This document shows, in pieces, positions 6,035-54,900 of a stretch of 64,000 bases of DNA. Source of the DNA: Selaginella moellendorffii (lineage: Eukaryota; Plantae; Lycopodiophyta). The stretch's first letter is position 1. The number at the start of each line of letters is the position of its first letter. Where the stretch lies: the NCBI RefSeq assembly GCF_000143415.4, contig NW_003314301.1, positions 1,356,981 to 1,420,980 of the forward strand, given 5' to 3'. The notes below the pieces were generated by a model. That model was not told the DNA's origin. It worked only from the letters and a program-made list of their open reading frames with translations, and ran no database searches. Position numbers and translations under genes: made by a program.

Positions 6035-6699
6035 CAGAATAGTTTTAAGCTGGAAAACAAGAACATGAGGCAAAGAGCTTGAACTGAAACTACATAAAAA
6101 TGATCGCAAGATTTCAAGCTTGTAAAATTACTAGATCTCAAGCTTGCAAAATTAATGTCATCTCTAAATTTTTAAATATTAGAAAACATTATTTTATAAA
6201 TGGAAAGAGAATCTATCTTGATGGTAGAGCCATTTTCGTGCTATAAAATGCTAAGTGTAATAAATTTTGAAAATTAGTATGTAGTTGATATATGTCCTCA
6301 TTGAGGTGTGATTGAAGCCCTTTATGCAAGCACATCCATGCTATGAAAGAAATTCAACTCCAAAGAAGAAAAGACAAAAAGCCCAATCTATACAGTGAGA
6401 ATACGCTTCAAAAGAATAAATGTTTCAGCATCAAGGAAGTCATATATGATTTTGATCTTCTCTTCGGTAGGATGTTCATCTATAAATAAGAAATTTTAAA
6501 ATCAAAACTACTTTACTTACTTGAGTTTGGATGTGAAAACTTGTTATTCCAATGTTCTTGAACAAGCTTGACCGGTAAATTGATATACTCCACCAAAGAC
6601 TCTTGTGCTATTCTCTCAGCTGAATTTCGTCCATATTGAATAACAAGTTTAGATTTGCATCTTGCAATCAAGTGTTTATGGTTTTCACCATTTCCTTGA

Positions 6700-6805
6700 T
6701 TCTCTTCCTCTCAAGGATATATGGCAACGATGAGCGTCAATCTGGCACGCCTGGATCATGGTGAGCGCTCGGATCGGCATCTTACTGCATTGAAGCAATG
6801 CGGCC
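6700..6805 (+). pseudogene. Short duplicate of the PPR gene 5' end
   Basis: tctcttcctctcaa...ggcaacgatgagc...tctggcacgcctggatcatgg...gcattgaagcaatgcggc matches ~1722-1841. Confidence 0.8.
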
Positions 6806-7797: not shown

Positions 7798-9599
7798 GCG
7801 AAGATAGTCACGTATCTCTCATGACTGTCCATATCCAAATCCACTGTTGTTCTTGCCAAGATCTCAATTATTCCCATTGGAACTCTCCACTTCACAATGA
7901 TTGCCTTTCTCGATTACTTCCTCCTCGAGCTACTCCTCCCTGTGAATCAAAACGGTCCTGGATTTGTTGCGACCTCAGCCTCAAGTATCTGAAGTTCTTG
8001 AGCAGCGTCTTGAAAATTGTGGACTATTGTCAAAGTCAAAACCATGCTTTGTTTTAGACTAAGCATGATTAATTAGTGGGGGATTAATAATAATATTAAA
8101 GCTAGGTTATCCATTGAGAGGAAATACAAAAGAAGGTTTAATGAATAATAAAGAGTAAATGGTGGTGTGATCAATGACATTGTTAAAAAGGTCAATACTA
8201 AAGATAATGAACCTTTAGATGGCTATTGTAATAATTAGTACTAGAGCATGAAGAAGCTCAAAGTGTGAGTGCACAGAAGCTTCACGGTTTGGTTGCCTAA
8301 AGTCGAGTTGCCAAGTGTTCTGCATTGCCACCTACAAAGAGCTAACAAATGAGGAAGGAGAGAAGAAGAAGATTGGGTTTGGGTGGCGTGGCCCACTCAC
8401 ACCAACGTCCTCTAGTCTTAGCTTGCCACAGTTTGAAACGACTAGACTAAGTCGTGCTTTAGTCTTCTTTTCTTCCGTTTTTAATGGTGTCATCTAAAAA
8501 ATTAGAAAACGCGCAAACGTGTTGCATCATTTTGTATGTATGAACTAGCGAGAGAACGTTATATGCTTGTGTTGAGCAAAATACAGGGCTTGTATCCATG
8601 GCCAACCTCGATCCCACTGGTGTGCTGGGAGCGCTTGTTTCTGAAGCTGTTAAAGAAGTGATTGGGCTTGCCAAGTCTGCCATTCATTGCAAGGAGAAGT
8701 GCAGCGAGTTGGAAGTTTCATTGACCAAAGCATCAGGTCTACTAGGTGAAATGAAGAAATATTCTGCTGCCGAGGGCTCTCTGAGCTCCTCACAACTGGA
8801 TTCCTGGCTGAAAGCCCTCCAAGCCAAGGTTGAAGAGGCTAAACCTCTTGTTCTTGAGTGCCAGTCTCTACAAAATCCCATTCTAGATTGCCTAAAGAGG
8901 TTGGTTGTGCTTCTTTTGGGATATTTCTGAATTGAGTTTGTGATTTTGTTTCAGGATAAGACTTGCTACCATCTCTGCTCCAAGGCGATCCATGGGCACT
9001 TGGTTGCAGCTCCTCTACATCTTGGCGTTGAGATTCTGAAGAACATTGATACATTGAAGAAGCAAAAGGAGGTGCCATCTAATGTGGTTCCAAAGGAAGA
9101 ACAGCATGTTGTTCCTCTGGATGACCACATTTTCGGCATGGAAGAGATGCTGGAGCGGGTTGTATCAGACTTGCTGGGGTCCCCTGTAAGCAGCAAGTGG
9201 GTTGGAGTCCATGGAGCAGGAGGTGAGAGGAGTCGCGTTTCAAAATCCATCACTCCTGGCCAAACGAGTATGTGACAACGATCAAGTCAAGGGGCGTTTC
9301 GATCCAATTTTGTGGCTAACATTCGGTCAGTCGGTTCAGGTACGTTCCTTAAGCTTATAATTGAGCAGCTATGGTTGTATTTCCTCAGGTGGAGAAAAAG
9401 CAGCATGAACTTGCCAAACAACTCCGACTAGGTGGTCAGAGAAAGAAAAGCGGAGCAAGAACAATGGATTTCACTTCAACACACATTGATTCATTTATGG
9501 CTGTATATATATACAACTTCAATCAAATCGGAAATCACCAGAGATCTGATCACGATTCGGACTGCTTGTCGTGTTCATCATTATTCCTACACTCCCCCT

Positions 9600-11099
9600 T
9601 CAAGCTGAGGGTGTGCTTGACACTCCAAGTTGATTCCTCAGCTTGATGAATGTGAGCTCCGAAAGTGGCTTGGTTAGAAGGTCCGCCAACTGATACTGTG
9701 AAGGAATGTATTCCAGGTGAAGATCTCCGGCTGCTACGTGTTCGCGAATGAAGTGATGCTGCACGTCTATATGTTTCGTACGAGCATGAAACACAGGATT
9801 CTTTGACATGGCGATTGCACTTCTGCTGTCGCAATGCAGAATGGTCGCATCTGATTGCTGTTGATTGAGTTCTCCAAGTAATCGACGAAGCCAGATGATC
9901 TCCCTTGCTGCTGTACTAGCAGCTACGTATTCTGCTTCTGCACTGGAAAGAGCAACCGTCATTTGCTTCTTGCTTCCCCATGAAACCGGAGCACCAGCAA
10001 TTATGCAGCAAATTCCGGAGGTTGAATGTCGTGTATCCAAGTTGCCAGCCCAATCTGCATCGCAGTAAGCTTGAAGAACAAGTTTGGATTGACCTGAGCA
10101 TTTGTAAACCAATCCATGAGCAGCCGTTCCTTTCAAATACCTCAAAACTCTCTTCACCATCTGCCAATGATAACAACTCGGAGACTGCATGTATCGGCTG
10201 AGGAGACCAACGGCAAAGGAGATGTCAGGGTGAGTCATGTTGGCGAGGTAGAGTAGTCCTCCAACAAGCGATCGGTAGACCGAGGGCTGATCAAATAAAT
10301 CATCCATCTTGCTTGTGAACTTGATGCCAGTGACGACTGGCGTAGCCACGGATTTGCAACTTGTCATGTTGAACTGGTTGAGAAGCTTCTTCACATATTG
10401 GCACTGTGTGAGGGTGATTGTCCTGTCTGCTTCATCCCTGTCAACTTCCATCCCTAACAACTGCCGCACAGCTCCTAAGTCCTTCATCACAAACCTGTTC
10501 ATAAGCTTGATCTTCACATCCTTCAAAATAGCGTGATTGTTGCTGACAATCAAACAGTCGTCCACATAAACTGCTATCACAACAAAGTGATCACCCTGCT
10601 GAAGAAGATATAGATTTCCATCGCTGTTCAACCTCTGCATACCGAGATCTATAAGAAAAGAATCCAAACATTCATACCACTGACGGGAAGCCTGCTTAAG
10701 GCCATAAAGAGCCTTGCGAAGCTTGCAGACGAGTTCGGAGCACCGTGATCCAAAAAGCTCAAAGCCTAGGGGTTGCCGCATAAATATCTCCTCCTTCAAG
10801 TTCCCATTAAGGAAGGCTGTTTTTACGTCTATGTGATGTGCGCACAAACCAAACTCCGCTGTAAAAGCCAAAAGCATTCTGATACTTGTCTGCTTCACAA
10901 TTGGTGAGAACGTCTCATCAAAATCCACTCCAGGAACTTGTGAATATCCTTGAGCAACAAGTCTTGCTTTGTAACGCTGTACCGATCGTCCTCCTCTTCC
11001 GCGGCCTCCTCTGCCTCGATGATTTCCAACCCACAGAGCTGAATCAGTCCTTGACTGATTGCTTGATGCAGAAGCATTTGATGTAGACTGTGAGATCAA
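9600..11099 (-). CDS. Ty1/Copia RT-RNaseH (protease and integrase absent; Gag RGG tail fused directly to RT)
   Basis: YKARLVAQG, IDVKTAFLNG, LYGLKQA, YVDD, YCDADWAG, SSAEAEY, HARTKHID, QLADLLTK; stop followed by PPT agggggag and TGTAGG. Confidence 0.95.
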   Translation of the reverse strand: MISQSTSNASASSNQSRTDSALWVGNHRGRGGRGRGGRSVQRYKARLVAQGYSQVPGVDFDETFSPIVKQTSIRMLLAFTAEFGLCAHHIDVKTAFLNGNLKEEIFMRQPLGFELFGSRCSELVCKLRKALYGLKQASRQWYECLDSFLIDLGMQRLNSDGNLYLLQQGDHFVVIAVYVDDCLIVSNNHAILKDVKIKLMNRFVMKDLGAVRQLLGMEVDRDEADRTITLTQCQYVKKLLNQFNMTSCKSVATPVVTGIKFTSKMDDLFDQPSVYRSLVGGLLYLANMTHPDISFAVGLLSRYMQSPSCYHWQMVKRVLRYLKGTAAHGLVYKCSGQSKLVLQAYCDADWAGNLDTRHSTSGICCIIAGAPVSWGSKKQMTVALSSAEAEYVAASTAAREIIWLRRLLGELNQQQSDATILHCDSRSAIAMSKNPVFHARTKHIDVQHHFIREHVAAGDLHLEYIPSQYQLADLLTKPLSELTFIKLRNQLGVSSTPSA

Positions 11100-11635
11100 A
11101 ACATGGGAAGGCCTCTGTCAAAGTCCACAATCAAACCTCTCGCAGCCAGCTCCGAGCGTAAAGTTTGCTCAGCTTGTTCAAAGTTGAGCGACATCATGCG
11201 AACGGTAGGGACGAAAGAACTAAAAGAAGAATCTTGCATGGCCTCGCAAAGTGCCAGAACTTTCTTGCTTTCGTTGAACGCTGCTGGACTGCCTTCAAGC
11301 TCCATCCACAGATCTTGCATCTTGGCGAGGAACTCTTCAAAGTTCTCGCCTGGATGAAAACAGGTCTCACGAATGCAAGTCTCGACCATGCTAATCTTGG
11401 AGAGGGAAAGAACAGCATACTTGTTGTGGAGATGAGCCCAGATCTCACAAGCACACTTATGACGCATCATAAGGGCATCTGCAAGCTTAGAAAGAATCAA
11501 TCCTTTTGCTCGAGATTCCTTCTTCTCCAGCGCAGCTTGTTCCCCTGGATCAAGCTGTTGTCGAGCTGCTGCAACAGAGGCACGAATTGCCTCTTCATCC
11601 ACGACTTCTCCTTCCACTGAAGTTGAAGCTCCCAA
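11096..11635 (-). CDS. Copia Gag fragment
   Basis: KESRAKGLILSKL...ACEIWAHLHNKY...FEEFLAKMQDLWMEL resembles Copia gag (UBN2-type); lies directly upstream of the RT ORF with a frame change. Confidence 0.75.
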   Translation of the reverse strand: MGASTSVEGEVVDEEAIRASVAAARQQLDPGEQAALEKKESRAKGLILSKLADALMMRHKCACEIWAHLHNKYAVLSLSKISMVETCIRETCFHPGENFEEFLAKMQDLWMELEGSPAAFNESKKVLALCEAMQDSSFSSFVPTVRMMSLNFEQAEQTLRSELAARGLIVDFDRGLPMF

Positions 11636-11910
11636 TGCAGCAAGGGCTCGCCTAGGAATAATGAATAATTCTTATGTAGGAATAATGATGAACACGACAA
11701 GCAGTCCGAATTGTGATCAGATCTCTGGTGATTTCCGATTTGATTGAAGTTGTATATATATACAGCCATAAATGAATCAATGTGTGTTGAAGTGAAATCT
11801 GTTGTTCTTACTCCGCTTTTCTTTCTTGGTATCGGAGCTATGGTTGGATGGCCTGTGGTAGGCATGGACTGGCAGGTAGGGATGTGTGGCGTGTTCAGCT
11901 TAGGGGGGAG

Positions 11911-12030
11911 TGTTGGAACTAAGCTGAACATGCACACAACTAGGGCAGGTAGCTCAGTGGTAGAGCACCTGGCACTGGTGTAGGAGGTCCTGGGTTCAAT
12001 CCCTGGCCTGTCCAGATCCATTTTCCAACA
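11911..12030 (+). mobile_element. 120-bp LTR (LTR-B) of a TRIM containing a tRNA-like sequence
   Basis: Perfect terminal repeats TGTTGGAA...TTCCAACA; preceded by PPT aggggggag (11902-11910) and, further upstream, Met-type PBS TGGTATCGGAGCT (11827-11839). Confidence 0.85.
11943..12014 (+). ncRNA. tRNA-like sequence (Pol III A and B boxes; anticodon loop degenerate)
   Basis: Acceptor GGGCAGG/CCTGTCC-A, D arm TAGCTCAGTGGTAGAGC, T arm CTGGG-TTCAATC-CCTGG; the 17-nt anticodon arm lacks U33, so it is probably not a functional tRNA. Confidence 0.8.
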
Positions 12031-14429
12031 GTCAGATCAGCAATGAAACATTGAGGGAAGAGATGCTTGCTGGTGTTGGATGATGTCTGGAAGTTCACCC
12101 ATTTGGATCTGTTTGACGTGGTGCAAGAGAATGGAAGCAAGATCTTCATTACCACTCGACAACGTGATGTACTTGACAGTAGAGGTGCAATCAAAAACGA
12201 GATGGGGCTCTTGGGAAAGGAAGACAGCATGAAGTTGTTCGGAGTCCACGCATTCCCAAACCAAAATCATGCTCCAGTCAGCAAGGAAGTAGTGGAGCAA
12301 GTTGTGGAAAAGTGTGGGGGGCTTCCACTGGTCTTGAAGGTAATCGGCAGAAGAATGGCAGCCACACAAGATTGGGACAATGTTCTGAGCAGACTCAAGG
12401 AACAGCAACTTCTTGCTCTTGATGAGGAACAACAGGTACTGCAGCGACTCAAGCTGGGTTACGATGCATTGTTGCCTCTCAACCAGCAGCACTTTCTCTT
12501 CTTTGCAGCGTTTCCAGAAGACTGCGAGATTGTATTTTGGGAGCTGTACAGGTGTTGGAAGGGGAAGGGCTGGTTGCCAACATAGCAGAGGCCAAGAATG
12601 TTTTAGAAAGGCTCAAGAATCACGCACTTATCACTGAAGAAGAAAAAGACGGGCGAGGGGAAACACTGAAGAGGTACAGGATTCACGATGCGTTGCTGGC
12701 TCTTGCTTTGCACATCCTGGAACAAGAAGGCCCCAGGTGTTATTTCAAGGCTGGGCAGTCGCAGATGAAGGACATGGGGGACGCGTTCACGAGTGACTAC
12801 AACAGGATTTCATTGGCTTGGTGTAGCATTTCGGAAATCCCTCTGCCCAAGAAGAACAGGCTGAGAGTTTCCGACACCACTTGCCTTCTCTTGGATTATA
12901 ATCTCGATCTCACTGCATTGCCAAGCCTCTCTCATTTCAGAAGATTGAAGGTTTTGTGCCTAAGCCACACTGGGGTGGTAAGTTTGCCACATAGCATTGG
13001 ACAGCTCAAGACTCTAGAGGCTCTGGATTTTTCTTGGGATGTGTCACTCGAAAGCATCCCAGATTCACTGGGCAACTTGACGAATTTATCATATTTGAAC
13101 TTGGCCGACTGTCGGCGACTCAAGTCTTTCCCCGTGGATGCTTTGCTCAAACTCACCAAGCTGGTCTACTTAAACGGAAAGAGATGTCACGGAATGTGGA
13201 CGTGCCACAGGCCGCATCATCGGCTTTTCGAACAGAAGAAATGCTTAAACAGGAGGTTTGGAAGACTCTATCTGGATGGGATGTTTCAGGCGTTGACAGA
13301 GTTGGAGGTGTTGATTATTGATACAGCGTTGCCTGTGGATATACCAGTAAGCATAGGCAAACTGACCCATTTGAAACAGTTGGAAATACGAAGTTGGCAG
13401 GTGGGAACATGTGATAGCTTTCAAGGCTTGCCCAACCTTGACATCTTGAGACTGGAGGGATTGGAGCTTCCATTGACCTGGGACTGGAGCAAATGTGTGA
13501 GGTTGAGAACTTTGGAAGTGAGACGTTTTGGGCAAAGTGACTTTAAAGTAATATCCAGCATGGAGAACTTGCAAGAATTGCATATTGATGGCAATCTTGA
13601 AGGGCTTCCTTTCTTAACACAGAAAATGATTCCCATGCTGATAAGCCTCTCCCTCAGTAATTGTAAAAGCTTGATTGGGGTGCCCACCATCTCTCAACTG
13701 GCATCACTCAAGGTCCTCAACATCGACACCTGTCCCTCCTTGAAGGACCTCTCCATCTCGTTCCTTCCAAATCTAGAGACAGTTACTCTAGGTTTCTGCA
13801 ACGAAGTGACCACCATCAACATATCCGAGTGCCCATCACTGAGAGTTGTTCGAATCGAGTACTTTCCCATGCTTGCCTGTGTCACATTCGGTGGCAAGTT
13901 CCCACGACTTGAAGGAATAATCCTTGGTGGATTTGAACAGCTTCCAGATGTCTCTCTAGGTGCCATGGATGCGTTCCCACAGCTGACACGGCTGGAAATA
14001 GCGAGATGTGGTACTGACCAACTACCAGAATGGTTCACATCACTCACAACGTTGAGAACTCTGGAATTAAGGTATTTGGAGAACTTGAATGTGATACCTG
14101 ATGGTGTTGCAAGGCTTCCTCTGCTAAGGGTGCTTCATCTGGGAGGTTGCAAGAAGATGAACATGTTACCCTTTGCAGATTCTGAGGACAGCTCTTTCTA
14201 TCCATCCCTGGAGTACTTATGCTTGACAGACACATCCGTCTCTCAAGAGCACCTCTCGCAACGCCTCTTGCAAAGTTTTAATGGGCTGCAATAACCAAAT
14301 CGCAACAATGAAACTTTGGAACAACGTTTCGCAAATCTCCTAAGGGTAACAATCTGCAAAGAGTCATGTTCCATGATTAGTGTCAAGCGAGGCTGTTCTT
14401 TTCCCACCGCCACAAATTCAAACTTTGGT

Positions 14430-18391: not shown

Positions 18392-19333
18392 NNNNNNNNN
18401 NNNNNNNNNNNNNNNNNNNNNNNNNNNNNNNNNNNNNNNNNNNNNNNNNNNNNNNNNNNNNNNNNNNNNNNNNNNNNNNNNNNNNNNNNNNNNNNNNNNN
18501 NNNNNNNNNNNNNNNNNNNNNNNNNNNNNNNNNNNNNNNNNNNNNNNNNNNNNNNNNNNNNNNNNNNNNNNNNNNNNNNNNNNNNNNNNNNNNNNNNNNN
18601 NNNNNNNNNNNNNNNNNNNNNNNNNNNNNNNNNNNNNNNNNNNNNNNNNNNNNNNNNNNNNNNNNNNNNNNNNNNNNNNNNNNNNNNNNNNNNNNNNNNN
18701 NNNNNNNNNNNNNNNNNNNNNNNNNNNNNNNNNNNNNNNNNNNNNNNNNNNNNNNNNNNNNNNNNNNNNNNNNNNNNNNNNNNNNNNNNNNNNNNNNNNN
18801 NNNNNNNNNNNNNNNNNNNNNNNNNNNNNNNNNNNNNNNNNNNNNNNNNNNNNNNNNNNNNNNNNNNNNNNNNNNNNNNNNNNNNNNNNNNNNNNNNNNN
18901 NNNNNNNNNNNNNNNNNNNNNNNNNNNNNNNNNNNNNNNNNNNNNNNNNNNNNNNNNNNNNNNNNNNNNNNNNNNNNNNNNNNNNNNNNNNNNNNNNNNN
19001 NNNNNNNNNNNNNNNNNNNNNNNNNNNNNNNNNNNNNNNNNNNNNNNNNNNNNNNNNNNNNNNNNNNNNNNNNNNNNNNNNNNNNNNNNNNNNNNNNNNN
19101 NNNNNNNNNNNNNNNNNNNNNNNNNNNNNNNNNNNNNNNNNNNNNNNNNNNNNNNNNNNNNNNNNNNNNNNNNNNNNNNNNNNNNNNNNNNNNNNNNNNN
19201 NNNNNNNNNNNNNNNNNNNNNNNNNNNNNNNNNNNNNNNNNNNNNNNNNNNNNNNNNNNNNNNNNNNNNNNNNNNNNNNNNNNNNNNNNNNNNNNNNNNN
19301 NNNNNNNNNNNNNNNNNNNNNNNNNNNNNNNNN
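18392..19333. other. Assembly gap (942 N)
   Basis: Run of n. Confidence 1.
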
Positions 19334-51472: not shown

Positions 51473-54400
51473 TTAAGTTGCTTTCTTCTTCTCTCTCACA
51501 TTTTTTGTTTTTCTCTCTTCTTCTCTTTGTGCATAATCATCAACAAACTTTGATATGAAAGTTGACTTTTCCTTAATGTACATGTTATAATGCTTTGAAT
51601 GCCTGTCCATAAACTCAGTTATAACCTTCATGTGGGGTGGCATATCATTAGGAGCTTTCTTCATAATAATGTGTTAAAACCATTATATGATGCTAGGATC
51701 ACAATTTATTCCAAAGGCATTGTGACGATTGTGTCGAGAAATAACTAAGAAAGCCCTTATGCCATTGAAGAAGTCAAGGATACAATCACTCTCATGGCAA
51801 ATGCATCACACAACTATGTCTACCAAAGCTTTTGACTTTTGTGAAAGAGGTTGCCTATAAAAAATATTTGAGGTATTTTCTTGTTTAAAAAGAAACGATT
51901 TACCAACTTTTACATTTAATGTCATCTATGATAATGTTGGTTGATTCATGTTGGAGGAGATTTGACGAAAGGTTCAAAAGCAAAACCACTTTTTCCTTTA
52001 TTTCCATTCTCTTATGGAACAATAACATTGAGATAGCTTTGATCAATATTGCAAAATCAATTACTAATTAGGAAACACAAGAACTTTAAATATAACTGCT
52101 TTTTGCCTCTAAAGCCCCAACCTGTTCATGACTTTAATATGTAATTTTTGATTAAGACAAAGTGAGCTTGAGAAAACACTTTTGCCATCCCAATTATTTG
52201 TGATGTCATCCTAATGGCTAAATACCAACAGAAAGTCTCATAAAATTCATTTGCAAAATTAATACTAGAATAAAACTGGGTTGGATCATTGTCATTATAT
52301 TTCTTCATTAGCCCCCCCGGCAGCTCTAATGAAGCCCAAAGAAAGTAAAGGATAACCAAGTCTAAAAAGTTATTCAATAAATGAGCACTAAAAAGATTAA
52401 AAGAAAAATTTACTTACTCAATGTGAAAGTTTATTAATAGAGGAACTCCGAGAGTAGCAATACATAAACTTCAGTTCCTTGAGAATTAATTTATGTTGCT
52501 TAAAAGTCCCAATATCTAGAGCTTTCTTATCTTCACCAGTTTTAAAATTGTCATTAAAATCCTTATCAACATATTTCTTATATGTCTTATAGCCTCTTGA
52601 AGAATGAATTTAGCCAAGTTTTCCATAGCTTTATGCTAGACAACAAAGTGGCCAAATGCTTTTGGCGTCTTGTTTAGATCATCAATATATGGTTTCCACC
52701 CAAGCTTGCGAAAAAGCTTTCTTCTGTTTTTCTTTGAAATTGGGACTTCTTCCACCTTAAGATTAGTAGAAAAACACAGTTAAATACAAATTAAATAAAG
52801 AAATTTTGTTAGCTTATTAGATGTAGTAAATACCTCTAATGTAGCATGTAGTCTCCTCTTCTTTTTTGACTATGTCTTCACTTTGGCAGGTTTGTCAACA
52901 TTATCAAATTCCATCAAAAATTCCTCCCTGATAGTCATAAGTTACTTTTCCTTAAACCACTTATGTGCATATGAATTCCACATTTCTTGCTCCACATTTG
53001 ACATCATAGCAACACCAAGATCGACAGTTTTCTTGCTCATAGTTTGTAACTCTAGTATATTTAGGTAGCTTCTCATTCCAATACATATAAGTAGGCGAGG
53101 TAGGGGATAACCACGGCTCAACAATAGTTGGAATTGCCTTCCACACAGATTTGAAGTACCTAAAAAATAAAGAAAATTAAAACTTGAAGAGTACAAAGTG
53201 ATGGAAGTGTTATCTATATGTAAGATGTTGACCAACTTTTTGCATTATTGCATCATTTGTCTCATCTCCCTAGTCTTCATCATCCTCCTCTTCAGTCTTG
53301 ACTTTACTGGACACTAGTTGAAGTTGCAGTTAAATCTATAAAATGCTAAACTCAAGCTTGCACTCGTTATAATACTCCAACACTATTTTATACTTTAATT
53401 AATCTACTCTAGAGAAGAGTTCTTCACCCACCTCCTTAACATATCCAATTGCTTTTTCCACCACCTTGATGTTCATCACTTTTTTCCTCCACCACACTCA
53501 GAACGACTTATCAATAGTTGGGATTGAAGAGTGGACAATCTTAGACGATCTGCCAGCTACTCTTAACTCCTTGAATGCTACTAGCTTATATGAATTTGGA
53601 ATTCGTGCTAAATCTATTATGTTTAGCTTCTCGAACATACACTATTTATATTGTAAATCCTCTACATTGAAGCTTGTGACAACATCAAACCATTCCTCCC
53701 TAAGATCTGAATGTGAGATGTTGATCAACTTTATCATTTTTACTGTATGTTTTTGCTTAATTTTGTCCTCTTCTTAGCAGCAATATCAATGTCAAGGCCC
53801 TTCTTCTTCAATCTCTCTAAATCCTTATTGATGTTATATTAGAGAAGCAAAAAACTTGAAATAAATACTTTAGCAAGTTTAAGTACCTCAAATAGGATGT
53901 GTGTGTAGATATATTGAGGGAACTTGGCAGAGCTATTGTGCTTTTTGGATGGCTACTGTCATGTTCAATTAGACCTTTTCCTCATTTATGAACTTGTCTA
54001 TAATCTTGCTAACATCTTCTTGAAGAATGTTTTGCGTAGCCATAATCATGTGTGGAAGAGTCATTTTGACTACAACATCTTTATATTGCATACATAAAAA
54101 AAATTATATTAATAAAGAATTTAGAAAAGAAATGAGCATACTTATTCACTGAAGTCAAAGTTGTAATGAGTGTTATATGATCTTTGTCCTGGAACTCTAT
54201 CACCACAACATCTGCCATAACATAATATCTCGAAATCTTCTCATTAGTTGGATTTAGATAATTCAAATTTATCCACAACAACTATGCCTTGAGTTAGTGA
54301 TTTCCCTCCCACATAAGTAACATTTGATTGGAAAGAACCTCTTTCCATTCGACATAAGTCTTATCCCTCAAAGTGGCTTCAAATTCTATGTCAAGCCACT

Positions 54401-54900
54401 ACTATGTCTCATTCCAAAAAGCTCTTTTATCATTCAAAAGTGGTGAATCCTTCACCACAATAAACTTGGACTCTATTTGCACAAAGCCTCACTGTTGAAT
54501 GGAAAATTTAAGTTAGTCCACAATGTCCACCATAGATTGCACTACTAGATTTGCGATCATGTAGCATAAAGGCACTCGAGGAGGTGGAACTTTCTTCTTA
54601 ATTGTCAGTCATTATAGCAAATTTAAGACAACCTCCACTTTGAACTTCAGGGGACAATTGAATGAGCTTGTATCCAAAACTTCTTTTTGTGCTTATAGCT
54701 TTACTTTCCACTTTTCCTTTCCTTTAACCCCATCCTCGGGTTCCTCTATAGTTTATTCTTTTTTGTGTGACTTGACTCTTCAAAGGGTTAAGGCCATCAT
54801 CATCCTCTTTTTCATCTTGTTGTTGCTCCTCTTCCTCTTCAAACTCATCTCCAAGCAATTGAAGATTTTTATTTGCTCGGGATTCTTAGTTTCCTCACTT
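51473..54900 (-). pseudogene. Decayed ParB-like + N4C/N6A DNA methyltransferase gene (intron-containing, probably transposon-borne)
   Basis: RVPLCYMIAN...VD*LKFSIQQ*GFV...FIV...LMWEGNH*LKA* at ~54270-54585; PLSQKSKALVDIVV*CICHESDCILDFFNGIRAF...NAFGINCDP at ~51690-51855. Confidence 0.6.

What the first reader, a model, noticed from the sequence alone, without database searches (positions are those of the whole stretch)
9440..12030. One insertion joining an inverted Copia gag/RT module to a tRNA-LTR TRIM
Seen: TSD-[LTR-A rc]-[PPT rc]-[RT-RNaseH, gag rc]-[LTR-A]-PBS-~60 bp-PPT-[LTR-B with tRNA]-TSD. The two LTR-A copies are inverted (about 4 mismatches in 152 bp), the outer ends are the 3' ends of two different LTRs, yet one GTCAG TSD bounds the whole. 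Both PPTs share context (tcagctt..agggg(g)gagTGT). Inference: template switching or auto-integration between co-packaged Copia and TRIM RNAs, which would identify this Copia as the TRIM's mobiliser; alternatively a self-propagating element with inverted LTRs.
Basis: partly seen in the sequence, partly recalled or inferred. Interest (0 to 1): 0.8.

Follow-up and report, generated by a model that had tools for sequence, protein, structure and literature searches.

The report
Copia–Helenus head-to-head chimeric insertion
One retrotransposon insertion in a spikemoss disease-resistance pseudogene fuses a gutted Copia element, back to front, to the tiny tRNA-carrying element Helenus exactly at their shared primer site; this suggests, without proving, that the two were copied in one particle and that this Copia family mobilises Helenus.

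Summary
Window 9440-12030 (Selaginella moellendorffii, GL377605.1) is one insertion bounded by a real 5-bp duplication, GTCAG. Two paralogous NLR genes carry a single GTCGG at that site.

The left part is the 3' portion of a Ty1/copia element on the minus strand. It has an in-frame protease/integrase deletion and lacks its first 220 internal bases. The right part is a forward Copia LTR, then 84 bp and 120 bp that match the published Helenus-1_SMo internal region and LTR (Kojima 2024).

The two Copia LTRs are inverted sister copies. They differ only by four C>T/G>A transitions, three of them at CpG. The Copia-to-Helenus switch lies inside the shared 12-nt primer-binding site. The inner joint is a 22-nt stuttered filler with no internal duplication. 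This excludes auto-integration and nested insertions.

Best reading (0.62): aberrant reverse transcription in a particle that held both RNAs, a head-to-head joint, then integration through two U5 ends. The product is dead on arrival.

Helenus and this Copia also share the polypurine-tract/LTR-start sequence (32 of 38). The Copia family is therefore a candidate helper, which the 2024 paper does not name. This rests on one locus; no genome-wide count was possible. Earlier notes of this scan report analogous inverted-LTR and PBS-joined chimeras elsewhere in this genome.

The parts
9435..9439 (.). Left copy of the 5-bp target-site duplication, GTCAG
   Evidence: Paralogs L002 and L003 have one GTCGG here.
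9440..9591 (-). Copia LTR-A, the 3' LTR of the minus-strand Copia part. Its U5 end abuts the host.
   Evidence: Inverted repeat I1. 98% identical to the L001 3' LTR. Four-way alignment.
9592..9608 (-). Copia polypurine tract and its upstream context (reverse complement of TCAGCTTGAAGGGGGAG)
9600..11099 (-). 499-aa open frame. It runs from the gag Arg/Gly-rich tail, fused in frame across the deletion, into RT lacking about 30 profile positions at its N-terminus, then through the C-terminal region to the end of pol.
   Evidence: Pfam RVT_2 at 1.3e-70, profile positions 31-243. 97.6% identical to the L001 protein. Frame analysis.
10986..10987 (-). Internal deletion joint. 2,047 bp (L001 7607-9653: zinc knuckle, protease, integrase, start of RT) are missing, with 2-nt GA microhomology.
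   Evidence: Domain map of L001.
11096..11635 (-). Copia gag fragment (179-aa frame). It is separated from the downstream frame by a 1-nt deletion near 11117.
11651..11652 (-). Break of the Copia interior at L001 position 6933. The PBS, the 5' UTR and the first 54 gag codons (220 nt) plus the 5' LTR of this orientation are absent.
11653..11674 (+). 22-nt filler: a 12-nt copy of LTR-A positions 3-14, then a stutter (GAATAAT occurs three times across the joint), then TCTTA
11675..11826 (+). Copia LTR-A, forward copy, complete from its U3 start TGTAGG to its U5 end TTTCT
11827..11910 (+). Helenus-1_SMo internal region, 84 of 85 bp. The first 12 nt, TGGTATCGGAGC, are the PBS shared with the Copia; the last nt are the polypurine tract.
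   Evidence: Published consensus, read. Copia PBS region.
11911..12030 (+). Helenus-1_SMo LTR (120 bp; four differences from the consensus, three of them C>T). Its U5 end CCAACA abuts the host.
11943..12014 (+). tRNA-like unit inside the Helenus LTR, with A box 11950-11960, B box 11993-12003 and T4 12021-12024
12031..12035 (.). Right copy of the target-site duplication, GTCAG
8598..14294 (+). Host: an NB-ARC/LRR resistance-gene homologue, already or since a pseudogene. It has a P-loop indel near 9225 and a 14-nt frameshifting deletion at about 12054. The annotated model P0121 starts only at 12202.

Best explanation
The composite is the product of one integrase-mediated insertion of an aberrant reverse-transcription product. 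That product was made in a Copia virus-like particle that contained two RNAs: a protease/integrase-deleted Copia derivative and a Helenus-1_SMo RNA.

Step 1 (inferred from where the crossover lies). Plus-strand strong-stop DNA of the Copia (LTR-A plus a copy of the tRNA primer end) annealed to the PBS complement at the 3' end of the Helenus minus-strand DNA, not to its own. This gave LTR-A-PBS-Helenus interior-PPT-Helenus LTR. A copy-choice switch at the PBS during minus-strand synthesis would give the same joint.

Step 2 (inferred). The Copia DNA ended 220 nt short of its PBS. It was joined head to head to the intact U3 end of that chimera, with microhomology-primed stuttering. The agent was either a template jump of reverse transcriptase or host end joining.

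Step 3 (shown by the ends and the duplication). Integrase inserted the molecule through its two outer ends. Both are U5 ends, one of LTR-A and one of the Helenus LTR. The insertion made a 5-bp duplication in an NLR gene.

The product cannot replicate. No LTR lies upstream of gag, and no transcript would carry matching R regions. It has since decayed by CpG transitions.
For: Shown:
- One duplication at independently defined natural ends, with an exact single-copy site in two paralogs.
- The two LTR-A copies share two derived characters against L001 and differ only by four C>T/G>A transitions, three at CpG. They were identical at birth.
- LTR-A is complete to its last base. The next 12 nt are common to both elements. 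From nt 13 on, the sequence is Helenus and not Copia.
- The inner joint has a 22-nt templated, stuttered filler. None of the internal junction 5-mers match.
- The canonical family copy in L001 has direct LTR-A copies, the same PBS and polypurine tract, and a 5-bp duplication.
- Helenus and this Copia share 32 of 38 nt across the polypurine tract and U3 start, and 17 of 19 at the PBS.

From established knowledge:
- Plus-strand transfer relies on PBS complementarity, and reverse transcriptase switches templates often (PMC3187697).
- A template-switch origin of complex plant LTR insertions was argued from flanking duplications (PMC1950507).
Against: - It is a single locus. I could not search the genome for further copies, read support or an allelic empty site.
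- Two or three rare events are needed in one molecule.
- Plus-strand transfer is described as being between the ends of one complex, so a heterologous transfer is exceptional.
- The two inverted 152-bp LTRs could have flipped the segment between them after insertion. The original isomer cannot be known.
- The U5 ends of the two elements are not alike (TTTCT versus CCAACA). This weakens the idea that one integrase serves both.
- Whether the PR/INT deletion predates the event is unknown.
Confidence: 0.62

Rival explanations
1. Two separate cDNA molecules from one pre-integration complex were used by integrase, one U5 end each: a Copia-derivative cDNA and the LTR-A/Helenus chimera. The two free inner ends were then joined by host microhomology-mediated end joining, after about 370 nt of the Copia end had been resected. 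The PBS chimera still arises by reverse transcription. Only the order of joining and integration differs.
For: The filler with a templated 12-nt copy and a GAATAAT stutter looks like polymerase-theta-type end joining (knowledge of such junctions is my own). The U3 end of LTR-A is intact, as expected of a free blunt cDNA end. Both outer ends are U5 ends.
Against: It needs a chromosome break held together until repair. Reverse transcriptase template jumps produce similar fillers. Nothing in the sequence separates this reading from the best explanation.
Confidence: 0.2
2. Independent nested or adjacent insertions were later trimmed by deletions and an inversion. For example, a complete Helenus arrived first and a Copia later, or the reverse.
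For: Nested insertions and illegitimate deletions are the commonest source of complex LTR structures in plants (background in PMC1950507). The host gene shows other small deletions.
Against: - Both outer ends are exact natural LTR ends that abut one perfect duplication.
- Paralogs show no host base lost or gained.
- No trace of a 5' Helenus LTR exists.
- No internal junction 5-mers match.
- The Copia/Helenus crossover falls exactly in 12 shared bases.
- The two LTR-A copies are sisters.
Confidence: 0.05
3. Auto-integration: the ends of a Copia cDNA attacked its own interior. This inverted a segment and left inverted LTRs.
For: Inversion-type auto-integration does produce inverted LTRs around a flipped segment (own knowledge of retroviral auto-integration).
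Against: Such products are circles whose LTR ends are joined directly to the internal target with a 5-bp duplication. Here both U5 ends are joined to host DNA. The U3 end is joined through a 22-nt filler to a break with no duplication.
Confidence: 0.03
4. A self-propagating element family with inverted LTRs, or an assembly artefact.
For: Family: the coding frame is nearly intact, with one 1-nt deletion in about 2 kb. Artefact: the assembly is a two-haplotype Sanger draft with gaps; the nearest gap is 18392-19333.
Against: Family:
- No second copy in the 64-kb window or in L001-L004.
- No promoter upstream of gag.
- Unmatched R regions.
- No tyrosine recombinase or other alternative integration gene.

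Artefact:
- A misjoin would not create an exact duplication at natural LTR ends.
- The 152-bp repeats differ at four sites and are shorter than a Sanger read.
Confidence: 0.05

Closest known systems
Helenus-1_SMo, the tRNA-carrying TRIM ('TRIMp3') of Selaginella moellendorffii (Kojima 2024, PMC10886601)
   Same: Window 11827-12030 matches the published 85-bp internal consensus (84 bp, one G missing) and the 120-bp LTR consensus (four differences). It has the tRNA-like A and B boxes, TG..CA ends and a 5-bp duplication.
   Different: Only the interior and the 3' LTR are present. The 5' LTR position is occupied by a complete Copia LTR. The paper gives three sentences on the plant family and names no autonomous partner.
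Canonical Ty1/copia element of the same family at GL377657.1 (locus L001 6560-11202)
   Same: The LTR is 96-98% identical and the interior 98-98.5% identical. The PBS and polypurine tract are the same, and the duplication is 5 bp.
   Different: L001 has direct LTRs and the full gag-PR-INT-RT order, broken by two frame interruptions. The window copy lacks 2,047 bp (PR/INT) and its first 220 internal bases, and its LTRs are inverted.
Template-switch complex insertions of Triticeae (Sabot and Schulman 2007, PMC1950507)
   Same: A composite of two parental templates inserted as one unit. It is recognised by a flanking 5-bp duplication and attributed to aberrant strand transfer in one particle.
   Different: Those are tandem, same-family, three-LTR structures in direct orientation with matching outer LTRs. 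Here the parents are an autonomous-type Copia derivative and a TRIM. The crossover is at the PBS, the parts are head to head, and the outer LTRs belong to different families.
Copia-9_PGr / LTR-1_PTrit pair in rust fungi (Kojima 2024)
   Same: A Helenus whose internal termini correspond to the internal termini of a Copia. This was taken as evidence for mobilisation by Copia.
   Different: There the similarity covers 198 + 12 bp of the interior. Here it covers about 19 nt at the PBS end and about 17 nt at the polypurine-tract end, plus 20 nt of the LTR start. In addition there is a physical chimera.

Membership tests
Helenus-1_SMo (TRIMp3) | LTR of about 120 bp containing a tRNA-derived sequence with conserved A and B boxes | tested here: met
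   11911-12030 has 116 of 120 identical to the published consensus. Rfam tRNA at 49.4 bits. Boxes located.
Helenus-1_SMo (TRIMp3) | 85-bp internal region bounded by PBS and polypurine tract | tested here: met
   11827-11910 is 84 bp, identical to the consensus except for one missing G.
Helenus-1_SMo (TRIMp3) | Two Helenus LTRs in direct orientation | tested here: not met
   There is a single Helenus LTR. No second copy exists in the window. The 5' position holds Copia LTR-A.
Helenus-1_SMo (TRIMp3) | 5-bp target-site duplication | tested here: met
   GTCAG, but it bounds the whole 2,591-bp composite.
Ty1/copia LTR retrotransposon (family of L001) | Copia-type gag and RVT_2 reverse transcriptase | tested here: met
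   PF14223 and PF07727. 97.6% protein identity to the L001 copy.
Ty1/copia LTR retrotransposon (family of L001) | Protease and integrase between gag and RT | tested here: not met
   A 2,047-bp deletion corresponds to L001 7607-9653.
Ty1/copia LTR retrotransposon (family of L001) | Direct LTRs with the PBS after the 5' LTR and the polypurine tract before the 3' LTR of one continuous interior | tested here: not met
   The LTRs are inverted. The PBS after the forward LTR leads into Helenus, not into gag.
Template-switch complex insertion (Sabot-Schulman type) | Flanking duplication of the length typical for the superfamily | tested here: met
   5 bp.
Template-switch complex insertion (Sabot-Schulman type) | Three direct LTRs, with the outer two nearly identical | tested here: not met
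   The outer LTRs are LTR-A and the Helenus LTR. The two LTR-A copies are inverted.
Auto-integration product | LTR termini joined directly to an internal target, with a short duplication | tested here: not met
   The inner joint has a 22-nt filler and no matching 5-mers.
Autonomous partner of Helenus (functional claim) | Helenus RNA is packaged, reverse-transcribed and integrated by proteins of this Copia family | not testable with these tools
   The support is circumstantial only: a PBS-confined chimera and shared cis sequences.

The most novel reading that the evidence does not exclude
The locus is a physical fossil of Helenus RNA and RNA of this Copia family being reverse-transcribed in one particle. 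That would make this Copia lineage the first named autonomous helper of a polymerase-III-promoter TRIM in plants. No helper is known for Cassandra, and none is named for plant Helenus. Together with other inverted-LTR and PBS-joined chimeras noted in this genome, it would also show that plant integrases insert molecules through two like ends often enough to leave fossils.
Probability: 0.4. Interest if true: 0.65.

Novelty: new variant of a known kind. Interest (0 to 1): 0.5.

Why it matters
Which autonomous elements move the gene-less miniature LTR retrotransposons is an old open question. It is sharpest for those transcribed from captured polymerase III promoters, namely Cassandra and Helenus. 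The 2024 description of Helenus states that no helper is known for Cassandra, and it names none for the plant Helenus.

This insertion gives a concrete, testable candidate: the Copia family with the 152-bp TGTAGG...TTTCT LTR, whose canonical copy lies at GL377657.1. Two kinds of evidence point to it:
- a chimera whose crossover is confined to the shared primer-binding site;
- shared polypurine-tract and LTR-start sequences.

It is also a clean example of an insertion made through two U5 ends. That bears on how strictly LTR-retrotransposon integrases pair unlike ends in vivo.

For the host it is ordinary: a dead insertion in a decayed NLR gene.

Tried and rejected
Searches that gave nothing:
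- Other copies of LTR-A, the Helenus LTR or the interior in the window and in four fetched loci. The only hit was the canonical Copia in L001.
- More family copies through proteins. The RT frame gave one Selaginella hit, P0001.
- An allelic empty site. No protein at 90% identity or more to the host NLR exists in the database. Look-up of P0123 failed. L003 (GL377654.1) is only 87-89% identical, so it is a paralog or a very divergent allele. I used it and L002 only as paralogous uninterrupted sites.
- The origin of the 22-nt filler elsewhere in the Copia or the window. Only the LTR-A start matches.
- A tRNA-iMet gene in the fetched loci, to check the PBS. None was found. The iMet assignment of the PBS rests on my own knowledge of plant Copia PBS sequences.
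- Scan notes linking Helenus with Copia. None exist.

Readings considered and rejected:
- Auto-integration, nested insertions, a DIRS-like or other inverted-repeat family, and misassembly. The reasons are given under the rival explanations.

Left undecided:
- Post-insertion flipping between the inverted LTRs cannot be excluded. It does not change the conclusion that the Copia/Helenus switch is at the PBS.
Full report
**Source and setting**

The window is Selaginella moellendorffii scaffold GL377605.1. The annotated protein P0121 (SELMODRAFT_419040) is encoded at 12202-14291, and its locus L004 is the window itself. The finding lies inside an NB-ARC/LRR gene (Pfam NB-ARC in the frame 12067-12585; LRR frame 12537-14294). 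The nearest assembly gap is at 18392-19333, far from the element.

**Check of the observation**

- The two 152-nt arms at 9440-9591 and 11675-11826 are 97% complementary.
- Between them the minus strand carries a 499-aa frame with RVT_2 (E 1.3e-70) and a 179-aa frame with copia-type gag.
- After the forward arm come the primer-binding site TGGTATCGGAGC, a short interior and a polypurine tract.
- Then comes a 120-bp TGTTGG...CCAACA repeat at 11911-12030. It holds a tRNA-like unit (ARAGORN; Rfam tRNA at 49.4 bits against a threshold of 29) with A box, B box and a T4 run.
- GTCAG flanks the whole.

**Identity of the parts**

The best protein hit of the RT frame is a Selaginella protein, P0001, at 99% identity. 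Its locus L001 (GL377657.1) contains a canonical element of the same family:
- direct 153-bp LTRs at 6560-6712 and 11050-11202;
- the same PBS and polypurine tract;
- its own duplication, CATGC;
- the domain order gag, zinc knuckle, protease, integrase, RT, broken in two places.

L001 fixes the LTR-A ends (TGTAGG...TTTCT) independently of the window.

Against L001, the window copy lacks 2,047 bp (L001 7607-9653), with a 2-nt microhomology at the joint. It also stops at L001 6933. It therefore has no PBS, no 5' UTR and no first 54 gag codons in that orientation. The deletion is in frame. The only frame-breaking lesion in about 2 kb is a 1-nt deletion near 11117.

The right-hand part is the published Helenus-1_SMo. 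Kojima 2024 gives a 120-bp LTR, an 85-bp interior and 5-bp duplications. The consensus in that paper's Data S1 matches 11827-11910 except for one missing G. It matches 11911-12030 except at four positions, three of them C>T and two of those at CpG.

**Is it one insertion?**

Two paralogous NLR loci, L002 (GL377690.1) and L003 (GL377654.1), align to both flanks at 81-89% identity. At the site they carry a single GTCGG where the window has GTCAG twice, with no host base missing or added. At the protein level, the flanks joined with one copy read RLGGQISNETLR, against RLESRISNETLR in P0124.

The duplication is therefore real and bounds exactly 9440-12030. None of the internal junction 5-mers match each other or the outer ones. 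No remnant of a second Helenus LTR exists. This rules out simple nesting.

**The two Copia LTRs**

In a four-way alignment, the two window copies share two derived states against both L001 LTRs: a 1-nt deletion and a C for T. They differ from each other at four positions. All four are C>T or G>A relative to the outgroup, and three lie in CpG. They were identical at birth and decayed in place, as expected if both came from one reverse-transcription event.

**The Copia/Helenus joint**

LTR-A is complete to its last base. The following 12 nt are identical in the Copia (L001) and in Helenus. From nt 13 on, the window follows Helenus (TATGGTTGG...) and not the Copia (GCTGGTTTC...). A crossover confined to the PBS is what a heterologous plus-strand strong-stop transfer predicts, because that transfer depends only on PBS complementarity. 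A copy-choice switch at the PBS during minus-strand synthesis would give the same joint. Either way both templates had to be in one particle. This step is inferred.

**The inner joint**

The broken Copia interior is followed by 22 nt. These are a 12-nt copy of LTR-A positions 3-14, a repeat of GAATAAT, and TCTTA. Then comes the intact U3 start of the forward LTR-A. This is a templated, stuttering junction, compatible with a template jump of reverse transcriptase or with microhomology-mediated end joining. It is not an integrase joint, so auto-integration is rejected.

**Integration**

Both outer ends are U5 ends: LTR-A on the left, reversed, and the Helenus LTR on the right. The 5-bp duplication shows an integrase-type staggered cut. 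Whether the head-to-head joint preceded integration, or two cDNAs were inserted by one U5 end each and then joined, cannot be told from the sequence.

One caveat applies. The inverted 152-bp repeats could have flipped the 2-kb segment after insertion. In the flipped isomer the Copia 3' half, LTR-A, the PBS and Helenus would be collinear, and the PBS switch would remain.

**Consequences**

The composite has no LTR upstream of gag. No transcript from it would carry matching R regions, so it cannot replicate. The host NLR is a pseudogene, with a P-loop indel and a 14-nt frameshifting deletion at about 12054.

**Helper question**

Helenus-1_SMo and this Copia family share:
- 32 of 38 nt across the end of the interior, the polypurine tract and the LTR start (0 of 2000 shuffles reach the score);
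- 17 of 19 nt at the PBS;
- the 5-bp duplication length.

Their U5 ends differ. Kojima 2024 names no partner for the plant family and states that none is known for Cassandra. The chimera plus the cis similarity make this Copia family, or a close relative, a candidate helper. Specificity against other Selaginella families could not be tested here.

**Comparison with known cases**

The nearest precedent for a composite inserted as one unit is the template-switch model of Sabot and Schulman. That model describes tandem same-family structures. Notes of this scan, which are unchecked, report other inverted-LTR single-duplication insertions and PBS-joined Cassandra chimeras in this genome. None links Helenus with a Copia.

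**Limits**

No DNA collection available here holds this plant genome. Copy counts, read support and the allelic site remain undone.

**Verdict**

This is a new variant of known aberrant LTR-retrotransposon products, and the helper lead is worth following up.

Noticed in passing
L001 6555-11207 (GL377657.1): Canonical copy of the same Copia family. It has direct 153-bp LTRs differing at one site, duplication CATGC, and a full gag-PR-INT-RT order broken into three frames. It is useful as a family reference.
   Followed up: partly
window 9215-9260 and 12054: The host NLR is decayed independently of the insertion. The P-loop region carries an indel relative to paralog L002. A 14-nt deletion (GGAGGGGGCTTGC-type segment in the paralogs) shifts the frame just before the LLVLDDVW motif.
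   Followed up: partly
window 10986/10987: The protease/integrase deletion of the Copia part is in frame. It fuses the Arg/Gly-rich gag tail to RT at ...GGRS|VQRYKARL. I could not determine whether a gag-RT deletion subfamily exists elsewhere.
   Followed up: no
L003 8392-11595 (GL377654.1) and L004/window: Both loci have PPR-PPR genes upstream of an NLR, but the NLRs are only 87-89% identical. They are either a segmental duplicate or a very divergent haplotype of the same cluster.
   Followed up: partly
window 11675-12200: The forward LTR-A, which has a TATA-like run at about 11760-11770, points through Helenus into the 3' part of the NLR. The annotated model P0121 begins at 12202. A chimeric LTR-driven transcript is conceivable but untested.
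   Followed up: no
window 51473-54900: Another note on this window flags a ParB-like plus DNA methyltransferase gene with introns. I did not examine it.
   Followed up: no
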